Assembly: GCA_002269645.1 (NCBI GenBank)
Contig: NIVC01002236.1
Coordinates: 126,855 to 190,854, forward strand
Length of the DNA stretch: 64,000 nucleotides
Source: Macrostomum lignano
Taxonomy: Eukaryota
Direction: 5' to 3'
Shown: one piece after another, positions 18,530 through 23,095 of the stretch
Layout of the letters: each line of letters opens with the position of its first letter
How positions within the stretch are numbered: the first letter of the stretch is position 1
Notes under the pieces: generated by a model
Database searches by the model: none
Told to the model about the DNA's origin: nothing
What the model saw: only the letters and a program-made list of their open reading frames with translations
Position numbers and translations under genes: made by a program

Positions 18530-19345
18530 GTGAGAGATTCGAATACCTGTCTCTGAGAAGTCAAGCCAATTCATGCCATTTTGCAGCCCTGACCCCCCGA
18601 TAACGTTGCTGACCCAAAGGCTGCTTAAGCCAATTGTCACGCAAGCCCAGTTACTGAGGTCAAGTTTGACTTTCATCGCAGGTTGTGAAGCTGTCTGCTG
18701 AACAGCCTGAGTACCGATTGCTGCCCAGTAATTAGCAGTAAATTTCTGCAGCGCAGCCTTGGCAACCGGAGAATCGCAATGTTTAACTTTCTAACTACTG
18801 ACAAATTGGAGTAGTATGCGATAACCGGCCACTGATTTGTTTATTTTTACACACACGTCCGAACTTCTGAAATATAATAATAGAACTAATTAGGCGAAAA
18901 TGCCTGAGGTAAAATGGTCTCGTATTCACTGCAGACTGAACCCGTTGTGAGGCCTTCCGGTTAGTTTGTTGGTGTTGGTTACATGTGACTGCGGCTGGCT
19001 GCTTGTGGAGTTCAATGGTTTACAGATTTGAAGGGCCTGGTGGGGAGATGCGTGAGATAGAGGGTAGGAGATGTGGGACAGAGGGTGGGAGATGTGGGAT
19101 AGAGGGTGGGAGATGTGGGATAGAGGGTGGGAGATGTGGGATAGAGGGTGGGAGATGTGGGATAGAGGGTGGGAGATGTGGGATAGAGGGTGGGAGATGT
19201 GGGACAGAGGGTGGGAGATGTGAGATCGAGGGTGGAAGATGTGGGATAGAGGGTGGGAGATGTGGGATCGAGGGTGGGAGATGTGGGATAGAGGGTGGGA
19301 GATGTGGGATCGAGGGGCGAGATGTGGGATCGAGGGTTGGAGATC
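18530..19345. repeat. Left inverted arm flanking ZF copy A (unique ~500 bp plus 21-bp GGGAGATGTGGGATAGAGGGT array)
   Basis: Reverse complement of 22325-23095; partial copies at 28826-29330 and 32860-33110. Confidence 0.85.
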
Positions 19346-19822
19346 TGAGTTAGAGGGTGTAAAATTATTATACAATACAACACAGTACAATTTAATACAA
19401 GTCATATAAGAAACGTTTTAATGTATTTTAATGCGGTTATCAGAATTAAACCAAATGTAAAATGTAAAAACATTGCTCACTTTTAACCACCAATCTGCGA
19501 GATCGACTCTCTGTACCTTTCCCTCCTGTTAATTCCCTTCTGCAAGCAGCAGTTGCTGCTTATTCCCTCAGACTTTACCTGCTATTCCATCCGGTACAGA
19601 GTTGGCACCATTCAGCGGGGGTCCGGGGGTCACCCGGCCGTCGCGCCGACCCCCCGCAGCGCTCGCAGCCACCGCAGCCGCGCCCGCCTCGTGCCGCTGC
19701 CGCCCCCGCTGTGCCGCAGTTTTCCCAGGCTGAAAACCCGAGCGTCCCTGCAGCTGGGGGATTTGCGGCTCTCCGCAGCTCAACTGTCTATGGCCGGCCT
19801 CCCGCTGCGGCTGGGGACTCTC

Positions 19823-19911
19823 ATTGGCTCTGAGCTGCCAGCCAATAGCAGCGAAGCTGCCCTCACTCAGCCTGAGGCGGCTGGGTTGGCGACCTGGGAG
19901 ACACCATAAAA
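19823..19911 (+). promoter_or_regulatory. Putative ZF promoter: opposed ATTGG/CCAAT boxes and TATA-like CATAAAA after a GC-rich island
   Basis: ATTGG 19823, CCAAT 19842, CATAAAA 19905; CCAAT pair also present in copies B and C. Confidence 0.4.
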
Positions 19912-20039
19912 CTGTGGCTCACCAGAAATGTTGGTTCTTCATTGTTGCTGAGCACGGAGTCCGCCGGTCCGGGCTTCTGATAAAGACTCTCAACTCTTCA
20001 CCTGCCGTGTGCTTGATTTAGCAATTTTTCACTCTGGAA

Positions 20040-21388
20040 ATGAGCTGCACCTCCGCATCTAGCGACGTAAGTTTTGTGACTTCAATTTTGGTGTTTAGAT
20101 AGATAGATAGATAGATAGATAGATAGAGTGATAGATAGATTGATAGATAGATAGATAGATAGATGGATGGATGGATGGATAGATAGATAGATAGATCGAT
20201 AGATAGATAGATAGATAGATAGATAGATAGATAGATAGATAGATAGATAGATAGATAGATAGATAGATGGATAGATAGATAGATAGATAGATGGATGGAT
20301 CGATAGATAGATCGATCGATAGATAGATAGATAGATAGATAGATAGATAGATAGATAGATAGATAGATAGATAGATAGATAGATAGATAGATAGATAGAT
20401 AGATAGATAGATAGATAGATAGATAGATAGATAGATAGATGGATAGATAGATAGATGGATGGATCGATAGATAGATAGATAGATAGATAGATAGATAGAT
20501 AGATAGATAGATAGATAGATAGATAGATAGATAGATAGATAGATAGATAGATAGATAGATAGATAGATAGATAGATAGATGGATAGATAGATAGATAGAT
20601 GGATGGATCGATAGATAGATAGATCGATAGATAGATAGATAGATAGATAGATAGATAGATAGATAGATAGATAGATAGATAGATGGATAGATAGATAGAT
20701 AGATAGATGGATGGATCGATAGATAGATAGATCGATAGATAGATAGATAGATAGATAGATAGATAGATAGATAGATAGATAGATAGATAGATTAATAGAT
20801 AGATAGATAGATTAATAGATAGATAGATAGATTGATTGATTGATTGATTGATAGATAGATTGATAGATTGATACGTAGACAGATAGATCTCAATCCAATC
20901 TCAATCCCACCTCAATTCCATCTCAACCCCATCTCAACCCCATCTCAATCCCATCTCAATCCCATCTCAATCCCATCTCAATCCCACCTCAATCCCATCT
21001 CAATCCCACCTCAATCCCAATTCCAGATGAGCTGCAACGCCAGCAGCTGCAGCAGCGGCAGCCTGGATGAGCAGCGGGAGCTCCTCAAGACTGAGCTTTG
21101 TCGCTACTTTGAGGTACAGTAAAGTGCTGAGTTTGAGTACCTACTCATGTAATACCATAGCTACTCAGGAACATGCACACCCCTTCATTTACCCACATAC
21201 CTCCTTCCCTTCAACACTGGCAGATGGGCAGGCCGTGTCCTTACTCAAGCAGCTGCAAGTTCGCTCATGGCCAGTGTGAGCTGAAGCAGCGGCAGAGGCC
21301 GAGGAACTACAAAACCAAGCAGTGCCGCTCATTCCACGGGCTGTCAGGGATTTGCAAGTACGGCTCCCGGTGCCAATTCCTGCACTGA
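20040..21388 (+). CDS. Minimal TTP/TIS11-type tandem CCCH zinc-finger protein, copy A (92 aa); exons 20040-20066, 21027-21113, 21224-21388
   Basis: Spliced [25 protein letters not shown]-18aa [27 protein letters not shown]; all introns phase 0, GT-AG. Confidence 0.88.
20097..21020. repeat. (GATA)n ~770 bp plus short ATCCCATCTCA array in ZF-A intron 1
   Basis: Direct reading. Confidence 0.97.
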
Positions 21389-21854
21389 ATAATCGCTAAA
21401 TGCCCTATGCGCTTCGATTGCTACTCACAACAGTAGTGTTTTGATATCAGCTGCGATTGACTGATCTTCAATGATTCTGTAAATATGCTTTCCTACCCGT
21501 TTCGGCGATTTGCTTACCGTAGTATTTTGTTGAGGTTTTAATTATAATATTGCTTTTTTATAATATTGCTCTCAACTTGCTGCTCTAATATCCACGTGTT
21601 TAATATTTTTTACAATGATTTGCTTGACGATTGTAATATTTAACTGTATCTGCACCTGCATGCGCTGTTCTGTGTGTGTGGTGTCACTTTATTATTAAAG
21701 GATGCAACTTCTGATTAAATATAAGGTGCTTTCGTGTGTTTCATTTCTTTATTATGACCAAAATTCAATTTGATTGGCTGGCTTTTGTTGATTTTGTTAT
21801 AATTATTGTTATACTGACATTTTCAAAAGTGGCTACGGCAATCGGAGAGAACTC

Positions 21855-22310
21855 CCTGCATCTCTCTGCATCTCCCTGCATCTCCCTGTATCTCCCTGCA
21901 TCTCCCTGCATCTCCCTGCATCTCCCTGCATCTCCCTGCATCTCCCTGCATCTCCCTGCATCTCCCTGCATCTCCTTGCATCTCCCCTGCATCTCCCTTC
22001 ATCTCCCTGCATCTCCCTGCATCTCCCTGCATCTCCCTGCATCTCCCTCCATCTCCCTGCATCTCCCTCCATCTCCCTGCATCTCCCTTCATCTTCCTGC
22101 ATCTCCCTGCATATTATGGATCTTTTCTGAATCTTCCTGCACCTCCCTATCTCTCTTGCATTTCCCTACATCTAATAAATCTCCCTGAATATTTTTGCTT
22201 CTCATGCATCTAATTCATCTCCCTGCATCTCCCTGTATCTCCCTGCATCTTCTAACATCTCATGCATCTCCGTAAAATCCTATGAATCTTCCTGAATTCC
22301 ACTGCGTCCC
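21855..22310. repeat. TGCATCTCCC 10-bp array downstream of ZF-A
   Basis: Direct reading; same family at 31420-32790, 33268-33730 and 47560-48135. Confidence 0.93.
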
Positions 22311-22324
22311 ATGTATGTCCTGCA

Positions 22325-23095
22325 TTCCCACCCTCTATCCCACATCTCCCACCCTCTATCCCACATCTCCCACCCTCTATCCTACATCTCCCACCCTCTA
22401 TCCCACATCTCCCACCCTCTATCCACGCATCTCCCCATCAGGCCCTTCAATACCATAAACCATTGAACTCCCCACCATAAACCATTGAATCCCCCACCAT
22501 AAACCATTGAACTCCCCACCATAAACCATTGAACTCCCCACCATAAACCATTGAACTCCCCACCATACGGTAAACCATTGAACTCCCCACCATAAACCAT
22601 TGAACTCCCCACCATAAACCATTGAACTCCCCACCATAAACCATTGGACTCCACAAGCAGCCAGCCGCAGTCACATGTAACCAACACCAACAAACTAACT
22701 GGAAGGCCTCACAACGAGTTCAGTCTGCAGTGAATACGAGACCAGTTCACCTCAGGCATTGTCGCCTAATTAATTCTATTGTCATATTTCACAAGTTCGG
22801 ACATGTGTGTGTAAAAATAAACAAATCAGTGGCCGTTTATCGCATACTACTCAATATGTCAGTAGTTGGAAAGTTAAACATTGCGGTTCTCCGGTTGCCA
22901 AGGCTGCGCTGCAGAAATTAGCTGCTAATTACTGGGCAGCAATGGGTACCCAGGCTGAGTACTCAGGTACTCAGCTTCACAACCTGGTATGAAAGTCAAC
23001 TGGAGCTCAGTAAGGCTGGTATCGTTAGCGAGGTAAGTGCTGCGTTGAGTTTGATTGACTGCTCATAAACAGGTATTCGATCTCGAGACTCATAA
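22325..23095. repeat. Right inverted arm flanking ZF copy A (with an extra CCATAAACCATTGAACTCCCCA array)
   Basis: Reverse-complement match to 18530-19345. Confidence 0.85.

What the first reader, a model, noticed from the sequence alone, without database searches (positions are those of the whole stretch)
18530..23095. ZF mini-gene enclosed by ~0.8-kb inverted arms: a possible Pack/foldback-type mobile cassette
Seen: 18530-19345 and 22325-23095 are reverse complements (shared cacacacatgtccgaact, gcagccttggcaaccggaga, acaggtattcga and the 21-bp array). Copy B keeps a left-arm piece (28826-29330) and copy C a right-arm piece (32860-33110), each in the expected orientation. No transposase is present and I could not find target-site duplications. 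Inference: an arm-gene-arm unit is being amplified, as in Pack-MULE/foldback elements. Alternative: the arms are exons of a divergent transcript duplicated by inversion.
Basis: partly seen in the sequence, partly recalled or inferred. Interest (0 to 1): 0.7.

Follow-up and report, generated by a model that had tools for sequence, protein, structure and literature searches.

The report
Palindromic zinc-finger gene cluster in flatworm
The inverted 0.8-kb arms around a small zinc-finger gene are real, but they look like local inverted duplications in a minisatellite-rich gene cluster of the flatworm Macrostomum lignano, including a palindrome whose centre appears flipped between two assembled copies, and not like a jumping gene cassette.

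Summary
Window 18527-19345 and 23092-22323 are inverted repeats; the core is 91-92% identical (E 1e-144). They enclose a complete three-exon gene for an 83-aa TIS11/TTP-type tandem CCCH protein.

The window is Macrostomum lignano DNA (Mlig_3_7 contig NIVC01002236.1).

The mobile-cassette reading is not supported:
- No target-site duplication exceeds chance.
- Arm identity falls from 96% at the gene-proximal ends to about 70% at the outer ends.
- The arm copies end at different outer points.
- The cargo is a whole gene under purifying selection.
- In about 123 kb of three assembled versions of the locus, the arm occurs only inside this cluster.

What I found instead is nested inverted segmental duplication. 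Genes B and C form a palindrome with 2.2-3.3 kb arms, and its roughly 470-bp spacer is a fourth, older arm copy. On a second contig (NIVC01003036.1) a central block of at least 1.6 kb, including that spacer, lies in the opposite orientation. The palindrome arms also evolve in concert within each contig (14 concerted sites, 0 colinear, 0 swapped).

Every homology breakpoint sits at a tandem array, and 51% of the window is minisatellite. A genome-wide search for the arm could not be run.

The parts
18393..18526 (+). Degenerate (CATCTCCCTG)n-like stretch directly outside the left arm. It is the same array family, in the same orientation, as the one that precedes the B/C spacer copy of the arm.
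   Evidence: A_L flank vs 32701-32850: 110 of 171 columns match
18527..19035 (+). Left arm (A_L), unique part. The outer 124 bp (18527-18650) is about 70% identical to the right arm; the core (18651-19035) is 88-96% identical.
19039..19359 (+). 21-bp minisatellite (r21), 15 copies, at the inner end of the left arm
19499..20066 (+). Gene A promoter/5'UTR and exon 1 (ATG at 20040, donor GTAAGT after 20066). This block is 96-98% identical among all gene copies.
20096..21019 (+). Intron 1 of gene A, filled by about 790 bp of (TAGA)n and an 11-bp array
21027..21388 (+). Gene A exon 2 (21027-21113), a 110-nt intron and exon 3 (21224-21388). Together they encode the 83-aa tandem CCCH (TIS11/TTP-type) protein, identical to UniRef A0A1I8HFP7.
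21852..22320 (+). 3' minisatellite 'm', (CATCTCCCTG)n, downstream of gene A. It runs directly into the inverted 21-bp array.
22323..22652 (-). Inner end of the right arm: inverted 21-bp array (22326-22435) and a right-arm-specific 22-bp array (22452-22652, 9 copies)
22637..23092 (-). Right arm (A_R), unique part. It shares a GCTACCGAAA block (23098-23107) with the B/C spacer copy, lying outside the point where A_L and A_R stop matching.
28825..29333 (+). Copy B left arm, truncated at the position equivalent to 18769 by the 17-bp array, plus its 21-bp array (29037-29333). The second contig shows the same truncation point.
29447..31420 (+). Gene B, the left palindrome arm: exon 1 ATG at 29982, exon 2 30638-30724, exon 3 30835-30999. 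The 83-aa ORF is intact.
31423..32786 (+). Minisatellite m(+) 3' of gene B. The part from about 32110 rightwards belongs to the block that is inverted on the second contig.
32790..33265 (+). Unique spacer of the B/C palindrome. It is a fourth, older copy of the arm (32863-33191, about 81% identical to the others). It is 96% identical to c2 17223-16684 but lies in the opposite orientation there.
33270..33731 (-). Minisatellite m(-) 3' of gene C
33821..35512 (-). Gene C, the right palindrome arm: exon 1 ATG at 34967, exon 2 34524-34438, exon 3 34328-34164. The 83-aa ORF is intact.

Best explanation
The arms are not transposon termini. They are copies of a roughly 0.5-kb non-coding intergenic segment ('a'), with an attached 21-bp array, that was duplicated locally in both orientations during the growth of a three-gene cluster of TIS11/TTP-like CCCH mini-genes in Macrostomum lignano.

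The cluster is built of nested inverted repeats. An 0.8-kb inverted repeat brackets gene A. Genes B and C lie tail to tail and form a palindrome with 2.2-3.3 kb arms, and its roughly 470-bp spacer is the oldest copy of 'a'.

Shown:
- The inverted repeats, three intact genes under constraint, and the absence of TSDs or sharp termini.
- Arm-to-arm concerted evolution of the palindrome.
- Opposite orientation of a central block of at least 1.6 kb (spacer plus the inner parts of both minisatellites) in two assembled versions of the locus.
- Location of every homology breakpoint at a tandem array.

Inferred:
- The inverted copies arose by replication template switching or fold-back, or by recombination at the minisatellites. 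The 3' array (CATCTCCCTG)n and the 21-bp array share an 8-nt complementary core, CATCTCCC/GGGAGATG, exactly at the 22320 junction.
- Intrachromatid recombination between the inverted arrays or arms flips the centre, and gene conversion keeps the arms alike.
- The effect is copy-number gain and homogenisation of a small RNA-binding-protein gene family. No separate function is assigned to the arms.
For: - Organism and gene: the 83-aa product equals M. lignano UniRef A0A1I8HFP7, and the annotated 187-aa model A0A1I8IM40 confirms splicing of exon 1 to exon 2. Pfam zf-CCCH scores 4e-16. TIS11d (1RGO) matches at 1.8e-15 over residues 20-83.
- Three further versions of the genes on two other contigs of the same assembly are intact. 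A differs from B/C by about 4% in the CDS, mostly synonymous (7-9 synonymous vs 2-4 nonsynonymous codons), against 15-23% in the intron and 3'UTR.
- Inverted arms.
- No TSD above chance.
- Identity gradient from outside inwards: 28% beyond the boundary, then 70%, 88%, 93% and 96%.
- Unequal outer ends: A_R and the spacer copy share GCTACCGAAA beyond the A_L/A_R boundary, while A_L and the spacer copy share the upstream m(+) context.
- The arm core occurs only four times in the window, all in the cluster. On c2 it occurs only at the equivalent places, and none was found in the fetched part of c3.
- Palindrome: B vs C is 96-99% identical, and B* vs C* is 100% identical over exon 2 to the 3'UTR. 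Site patterns are 14 concerted, 0 colinear, 0 swapped.
- The arms are asymmetric and non-identical and enclose a unique spacer, so this is not a chimeric-read artefact.
- Flip: the spacer is 96% identical but reversed. The inverted block is window 32110-33740 = c2 17849-16230.
- A control spacer at 37859-38459 has the same orientation in all three contigs.
- Breakpoints at arrays: 22320 (m|r21), 28825 (r17|a), about 33265 (a|m) and 35512 (promoter|CT array).
- 51% of the window is tandem arrays.
- Literature: recombination between palindrome arms within a chromatid inverts the spacer and is polymorphic in primates (PMC8327919). Mlig_3_7 contains 180 Mb of redundant blocks at least 95% identical, which explains the three versions of the locus (PMC5730564).
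Against: - The arm could not be searched against the whole M. lignano genome, so dispersed copies are not excluded.
- The order and mechanism of the duplications cannot be reconstructed uniquely. Neither a single inversion nor a single fold-back event reproduces the layout, and the identity gradient within A's arms needs a second process such as partial gene conversion.
- On contig 2 both A and B* have an arm-gene-arm layout, which is what amplification of such a unit would also give.
- The spacer flip rests on two Canu/PacBio contigs and has not been verified with reads.
- Contig 2 is base-identical to the window from 13.4 to 23.8 kb, so it gives no independent view of unit A.
Confidence: 0.7

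Rival explanations
1. The arm-gene-arm unit is a non-autonomous DNA transposon (Pack-type or foldback-like) that carries a whole TZF gene and has been copied locally. B and C would be decayed copies.
For: An inverted 0.8-kb pair brackets gene A. On contig 2, copy B* also has a left arm and an inverted right arm. The arms carry tandem subrepeats at their inner ends, which loosely recalls foldback elements. No genome-wide search could be made, so dispersal is untested.
Against: There is no TSD above chance. The outer ends are the least conserved part, and different copies end at different points. No transposase or any conserved ORF lies in the arms. The cargo is a complete gene under constraint, with its own promoter and exon 1. 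All copies lie within 17 kb. The orientation of the 'right arm' of B/C is simply the state of a flippable palindrome spacer.
Confidence: 0.1
2. The structural difference between contigs (the flipped spacer, and perhaps parts of the palindrome) is an assembly artefact of a repeat-rich, redundant PacBio/Canu assembly. Only the inverted repeat around gene A would then be biological.
For: The assembly is known to be difficult and redundant, with only 64% error-free bases by REAPR (PMC5730564). Near the spacer, the arms on contig 2 are identical over at least 800 bp. Contig 2 is a mosaic, 100% identical to the window on the left and about 97% on the right.
Against: The palindrome appears on two contigs, with asymmetric and non-identical arms and a unique spacer. 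The inverted block carries its own array variants with it (19-bp and 29-bp subvariants). The spacers differ at 4% of sites, so they are two different molecules and not one sequence placed twice. Neighbouring regions are colinear, including another spacer flanked by inverted arrays.
Confidence: 0.1
3. The arms are functional sequences kept in inverted orientation by selection. They could be boundary or regulatory elements for the TZF genes, or the stems of a hairpin RNA (with read-through of the tail-to-tail B/C pair giving dsRNA) that feeds small-RNA control of the family.
For: The arm core is kept at about 92% among A_L, A_R and B_L, while the gene's intron and 3'UTR have drifted to 77-86% between A and B/C. 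The convergent gene pair and the inverted arms would give long dsRNA if they were co-transcribed (inference).
Against: No transcript, ORF, splice signal or RNA family is associated with the arms. Gene C lacks any upstream arm yet keeps an intact gene and promoter block. The spacer copy has drifted to 81%. Gene conversion alone can explain the higher identity.
Confidence: 0.08

Closest known systems
[quoted passage not shown]
   Same: There are two inverted arms carrying whole gene copies and a unique spacer. The arms evolve in concert within a chromosome copy. The spacer is found in both orientations. Structural change is concentrated at the centre of symmetry.
   Different: The scale is tiny: arms of 2-3 kb instead of more than 8 kb, and identity of 96-100% instead of over 99%. 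The species is a hermaphroditic flatworm with no reported sex chromosomes (own knowledge). The inner parts of the arms are minisatellites, and these, rather than unique arm sequence, appear to be the exchange sites.
Fold-back / template-switch inverted duplications with a short spacer (Hermetz et al. 2014, PMC3907307; FoSTeS/MMBIR models)
   Same: An inverted duplicate lies next to its source, separated by a short single-copy spacer, with junctions at short homologies (here CATCTCCC/GGGAGATG at 22320).
   Different: Those are large, recent, mostly pathogenic human rearrangements with terminal deletions. Here the events are old (4-19% divergence), small, nested and fixed in several genome copies. 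The mechanism is inferred, not shown.
Pack-MULEs (Mutator-like elements carrying host gene fragments)
   Same: Inverted arms of several hundred bp flank host-gene sequence, and there is no transposase inside.
   Different: There is no 9-11-bp TSD. The termini are neither sharp nor best conserved. The cargo is a whole functional gene with a promoter and introns, not a fragment. No dispersed copies are known, and no link to an autonomous element could be tested.
Drosophila Foldback (FB) elements
   Same: Long inverted repeats contain tandem subrepeats, and the structure promotes inversions and rearrangements.
   Different: In FB elements the subrepeats make up the inverted repeats out to the termini, and the copies are dispersed with TSDs (own knowledge). 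Here the arrays sit only at the inner ends, the outer 0.5 kb is unique, no TSD exists and the copies are local.
TIS11/ZFP36 (tristetraprolin) tandem zinc-finger proteins (for the cargo)
   Same: There are two CCCH fingers with an 18-residue linker and a KTELC lead-in. The protein matches the TIS11d RNA-binding domain (1RGO) at E 1.8e-15.
   Different: The protein is only 83 aa, consisting of the TZF domain plus a 19-aa Ser/Cys-rich N-terminus. Finger 2 has C-x9-C instead of C-x8-C. There are no C-terminal or N-terminal effector regions.

Membership tests
Pack-MULE / TIR transposon carrying host sequence | Target-site duplication (9-11 bp for MULEs) directly flanking the two termini | tested here: not met
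   I scanned all boundary pairs within about 100 bp of the ends. The longest flanking direct repeat is 6 bp, and random right-hand windows give 6 bp or more in most of 200 trials.
Pack-MULE / TIR transposon carrying host sequence | Sharp termini common to all copies, with the outer ends conserved | tested here: not met
   Identity between A_L and A_R is 96% at the inner end, 70% in the outer 124 bp and 28% beyond that. A_R and the spacer copy share sequence beyond the A_L/A_R boundary, and B_L is truncated at the position equivalent to 18769.
Pack-MULE / TIR transposon carrying host sequence | Cargo is a captured gene fragment, or a chimera of fragments, lacking its own regulatory context | tested here: not met
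   The gene is a complete three-exon gene with a conserved promoter/exon-1 block. The ORF is intact in all six copies, and substitutions are mostly synonymous.
Pack-MULE / TIR transposon carrying host sequence | Arms related to the TIRs of an autonomous element; dispersed copies with other cargo | not testable with these tools
   No DNA search of the M. lignano genome or of a repeat library was available. Within about 123 kb of three locus versions, the arm occurs only in the cluster.
Foldback (FB-like) element | Inverted repeats made of tandem subrepeats reaching the termini | tested here: not met
   The arrays (21-bp and 22-bp) lie only at the inner ends, and the outer roughly 500 bp of each arm is unique sequence.
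Foldback (FB-like) element | TSD and multiple dispersed insertions | tested here: inconclusive
   No TSD was found. Dispersal across the genome could not be tested.
Palindrome / inverted segmental duplication maintained by recombination | Two inverted arms separated by a unique spacer | tested here: met
   B (29447-32786) and C (35512-33270) flank the spacer 32790-33265. The same structure is present on contig 2.
Palindrome / inverted segmental duplication maintained by recombination | Concerted evolution of the arms (arm-to-arm gene conversion) | tested here: met
   Informative sites split as 14 (B=C and B*=C*), 0 (B=B* and C=C*) and 0 swapped. B* and C* are 100% identical over 800 bp, while cross-contig identity is about 97%.
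Palindrome / inverted segmental duplication maintained by recombination | Spacer found in both orientations | tested here: met
   Window 32110-33740 aligns to c2 17849-16230 on the minus strand while both flanks are colinear. The spacers are 96% identical. The caveat is that this is contig-level evidence only.
TIS11/ZFP36 tandem zinc-finger family (cargo gene) | Two C-x8-C-x5-C-x3-H fingers separated by 18 residues, each with a (R/K)YKTELC lead-in | tested here: inconclusive
   Finger 1 is canonical with an LLKTELC lead-in, and the linker is 18 aa. Finger 2 is C-x9-C-x5-C-x3-H with an NYKTKQC lead-in. The domain matches 1RGO (1.8e-15) and 1M9O (2.1e-14).
TIS11/ZFP36 tandem zinc-finger family (cargo gene) | Effector regions outside the TZF domain (for example the C-terminal CNOT1-binding motif) | tested here: not met
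   The protein ends at the last His of finger 2, with 83 aa in every copy. That such a motif defines the family is my own knowledge.

The most novel reading that the evidence does not exclude
The minisatellite-flanked segment 'a' and its arrays could belong to a class of recombinogenic, foldback-like modules. Arrays sharing the GGGAGAT core would act as the exchange or template-switch sites, and the modules would duplicate and invert adjacent whole genes. In that case the arm-gene-arm units (A, and B* on contig 2) would be products of a semi-mobile, transposase-independent gene-amplifying mechanism. Their inverted and convergent layout might additionally generate hairpin RNA that regulates the TZF family.
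Probability: 0.1. Interest if true: 0.6.

Novelty: new member of a known kind. Interest (0 to 1): 0.3.

Why it matters
For the scan, a tempting 'gene-carrying transposon' call becomes an ordinary, though neat, case of local inverted duplication.

For Macrostomum genomics, the locus is a compact, PCR-sized example of three processes: a gene-bearing palindrome with arm-to-arm conversion, an apparent spacer flip between redundant genome copies, and minisatellites sitting at every rearrangement junction. These processes complicate assembly and paralogue calling in this neopolyploid model. The locus also shows that minisatellites, which make up half of this window, may be a main driver of small-scale structural change there.

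The cargo family, 83-aa TZF-only proteins absent from the NCBI annotation of this contig, may be worth a look as small ARE-binding regulators.

Tried and rejected
- RNA genes in the arms: the Rfam gathering scan of the whole window and ARAGORN both found nothing.
- Coding potential of the arms: six-frame translation of three copies shows stops in all frames and only a conserved peptide-like stretch of about 20 aa. I rejected this as an exon.
- Fetching genomic places by the ZF proteins: no record exists for them, because the ZF genes are unannotated in the NCBI record.
- Reaching the third contig beyond copy C**: its 3' minisatellite runs for at least 5.3 kb to the end of the retrievable DNA. 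The small 99-aa neighbour gene is on only two contigs.
- A simple single-inversion model (recombination between the 21-bp array and the 3' array): I rejected it because it predicts no second copy of 'a'.
- A simple tandem-unit model [a-r21-gene-m]: it explains A_L, B_L and the window orientation of the spacer, but not A_R.
- General flipping of spacers between inverted arrays: the 37.9-38.5 kb control does not flip.
- Mosaic history of A's arms (core converted, outer part old): the outer region is too short and too gapped to decide. A_L-S and A_R-S are both 23/41 there.
- Phage, plasmid, E. coli and prokaryote collections were not searched, because they are irrelevant for a flatworm locus.

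
Full report
**1. What the window is**

The 83-aa product of the mini-gene is exactly UniRef A0A1I8HFP7 of Macrostomum lignano, and its closest relative, A0A1I8IW08, is 98% identical. The neighbouring JHBP/Grp7-like gene is BOX15_Mlig021288g1 on contig NIVC01002236.1 of assembly GCA_002269645.1 (Mlig_3_7). Window position 1 corresponds to record position 126855, and the window ends at the contig end. Tandem arrays cover 51% of the window, in 44 merged arrays.

**2. The observation**

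The inverted repeat is real and far beyond chance.
- Window 18527-19304(+) pairs with 23092-22323(-).
- The unique core, 18651-19022 vs 23013-22637, is 91% identical (E 2e-144), or 92.4% without gaps.
- Both arms carry the 21-bp array at their inner end. The right arm has in addition a 22-bp array that grew out of a single-copy stretch of the arm.
- In the 64-kb window the arm core occurs exactly four times, all in this cluster.

**3. The cargo**

Each unit is a complete gene.
- Exon 1 (ATG at 20040, donor GTAAGT after 20066) is spliced across about 950 bp of (TAGA)n and an 11-bp array to exon 2 (21027-21113). A 110-nt intron follows, then exon 3 (21224-21388).
- The annotated 187-aa model A0A1I8IM40 contains the exon 1-exon 2 junction.
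- The protein is a TIS11/TTP-type tandem CCCH domain: Pfam zf-CCCH 4e-16; 1RGO at 1.8e-15 and 1M9O at 2.1e-14. Finger 2 is C-x9-C, and nothing follows the last His.
- There are three copies in the window: A(+) 19499-21731, B(+) 29447-31884 and C(-) 35512-33270.
- All of these, plus three copies on other contigs, keep the 83-aa ORF and the splice sites.
- A differs from B/C by about 4% in the CDS (7-9 synonymous vs 2-4 nonsynonymous codons), but by 15-23% in the intron and 3'UTR. This is a gene family under constraint, not a captured fragment.

**4. Tests of the transposon reading**

- TSD: over all boundary pairs within about 100 bp of the ends, the best flanking direct repeat is 6 bp. That is the median of random controls.
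- Termini: identity between A_L and A_R rises from 28% beyond the boundary to 70% in the outer 124 bp, then 88%, 93% and 96% towards the gene. This is the reverse of what conserved transposase-binding ends would show.
- Outer ends differ between copies. A_R and the B/C spacer copy share a GCTACCGAAA block outside the A_L/A_R boundary. A_L and the spacer copy share an upstream (CATCTCCCTG)n context. B's arm is cut at the position equivalent to 18769 by a 17-bp array, at the same point on both contigs.
- Content of the arms: no transposase, no ORF conserved between arm copies, no Rfam family and no tRNA.

**5. Other versions of the locus**

Using neighbouring genes as anchors, I fetched two more versions from the same assembly. 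Its redundancy is documented: 180 Mb in blocks at least 95% identical, attributed to extra large chromosomes of line DV1 (PMC5730564).

*Contig 2 (NIVC01003036.1, record 1-34869)*
- It is base-identical to the window from 13.4 to 23.8 kb apart from array lengths, so unit A with both arms is present. This is not an independent observation.
- It lacks the 5'-truncated non-LTR retrotransposon and adjacent sequence between A and B.
- To the right it is about 97% identical to the window.

*Contig 3 (NIVC01000591.1)*
- It shows one gene copy followed by at least 5.3 kb of the 3' minisatellite, beyond which nothing could be retrieved.

The arm is absent from the rest of the fetched parts of both contigs.

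**6. The B/C palindrome**

- B and C lie tail to tail, with arms of 3.3 and 2.2 kb in the window and 2.6 and 2.9 kb on contig 2. The unique spacer, 32790-33265, is the fourth and most diverged arm copy, about 81% identical to the others. A_L, A_R and B_L are about 92% alike.
- Concerted evolution: B*=C* is 100% identical over exon 2 to the 3'UTR, B-C is 96.2%, and cross-contig identity is 96.7-97.1%. Among informative sites, 14 are 'concerted' (B=C, B*=C*), 0 colinear and 0 swapped.
- Flip: the centre lies in opposite orientation on the two contigs. The spacers are 96% identical but reversed. The inverted block is at least 1.6 kb, window 32110-33740 = c2 17849-16230 on the minus strand. It carries its own array subvariants with it, while an extra outer block of the array stays on the B side in both contigs. 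The exchange points therefore lie in the inverted (CATCTCCCTG)n arrays.
- Control: a spacer between another inverted array pair (37859-38459) has the same orientation in all three contigs.
- Not a chimeric-read artefact: the arms are asymmetric and non-identical, which a fold-back read artefact would not give.
- Consequence: the 'expected orientation' of the arm next to C in the window becomes the expected orientation for B* on contig 2. It is simply a state of a flippable spacer.
- This behaviour matches what is described for primate X palindromes, where recombination between arms within a chromatid inverts the spacer and such inversions are polymorphic (PMC8327919).

**7. Most likely history and mechanism (inferred)**

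- 'a' is ordinary flanking DNA of the gene unit. It was copied in direct orientation (A_L/B_L with the gene, 92-94%) and in inverted orientation (A_R; C as the mirror of B around the spacer).
- All homology breakpoints lie at arrays: 22320 (3' array into inverted 21-bp array), 28825 (17-bp array into arm), about 33265 (arm into inverted 3' array) and 35512 (promoter into CT array).
- At 22320 the two arrays share the 8-nt core CATCTCCC/GGGAGATG. A nascent strand ending in the 3' array could therefore reprime on the 21-bp array 2.8 kb upstream and copy it and 'a' backwards, which reproduces the observed order. Fold-back inverted duplications with short spacers are documented in humans (PMC3907307).
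- A single event does not explain the identity gradient in A's arms. Later partial gene conversion is the simplest addition, but it is not shown.
- I could not derive a unique order of events.

**8. Verdict**

The best explanation is nested inverted segmental duplication with palindrome dynamics (confidence 0.7).

The main open points are:
- genome-wide distribution of the arm, which could not be tested here;
- read-level confirmation of the flip;
- the third contig's left side.

The kind of structure is known. This is a small, clear new instance in a flatworm.

Noticed in passing
window 24159-27390, vs L001 12800-13130: A 5'-truncated non-LTR retrotransposon fragment (RT C-terminus plus RNase H, minus strand, ORFs 24247-25907) sits inside the (CTCACT)n-type array. 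Together with a second block of that array and about 460 bp of unique DNA (26933-27390), it is absent from the second contig, where the array runs straight into a much shorter 17-bp array (about 360 bp vs 1.4 kb). This is an indel polymorphism between genome copies.
   Followed up: partly
whole window (44 arrays), e.g. 8861-10072, 19043-19359, 21852-22250, 37267-37858, 43475-43987, 50978-51967, 52548-53128: Tandem arrays cover 51% of the window. Thirteen of the 44 arrays, from about 7 different unit families of 10-26 bp, contain the same 7-mer core GGGAGAT/ATCTCCC. It is the top-ranked of 105 same-composition 7-mers, whose median is 0 arrays. This could be a shared minisatellite core or recombination motif.
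   Followed up: partly
window 22452-22652 vs 19011-19026, 28999-29035, L001 13605-13625: This looks like the birth of a minisatellite. The 22-bp unit (GGGGAGTTCAATGGTTTATGGT) is single-copy in A_L and B*_L, about two copies in B_L and nine copies in A_R.
   Followed up: partly
window 20040-20066 vs 21027-21053 (same in B and C): The coding end of exon 1 (MSCTSASSD) resembles the start of exon 2 (MSCNASSCS), and the first 10 nt are identical (ATGAGCTGCA). This suggests an internal duplication created the upstream exon. Both ATGs are in frame, so 83-aa and 92-aa products are possible.
   Followed up: no
window 13397-23825 vs L001; window 29447-37260 vs c2: The second contig is a mosaic. It has zero substitutions against the window over about 10 kb (JHBP gene and unit A) but about 2-3% divergence from the B/C palindrome rightwards. 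The cause could be recent exchange between redundant genome copies or a chimeric or bubble contig.
   Followed up: partly
window 19499-35512: The three TZF genes are not among the called genes of the NCBI record for this contig or its relatives, although WormBase/UniProt models exist (A0A1I8HFP7, A0A1I8IM40, A0A1I8IW08). This is an annotation gap for a small multi-copy gene family.
   Followed up: partly
window 15941-17997: The JHBP/Grp7-allergen-like (TULIP-type lipid-binding) gene next to the cluster has an intron (16433-17019) almost filled by a 12/24-bp minisatellite (16529-16949) that itself reads as a long open frame.
   Followed up: no
window 37267-37858 and 38460-38955: A second pair of inverted minisatellite arrays (23-bp units with the same GGGAGAT core) flanks a 600-bp unique spacer. 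Its orientation is the same in all three contigs.
   Followed up: yes
L007 16326-21614 (NIVC01000591.1): On the third contig the (CATCTCCCTG)n-type array 3' of the TZF gene is at least 5.3 kb long, compared with 0.46-1.4 kb in the window. This is extreme length variation of one minisatellite between genome copies.
   Followed up: partly
window 809-5842: A CNOT9/Rcd1 gene (314 aa, three exons: 809-1030, 4243-4742, 5620-5842) has a 3.2-kb first intron that holds a 61-bp array, (TCTA)n and a 17-bp array, and a second intron that holds a 25-bp array. Even conserved housekeeping genes here carry intronic minisatellites.
   Followed up: partly
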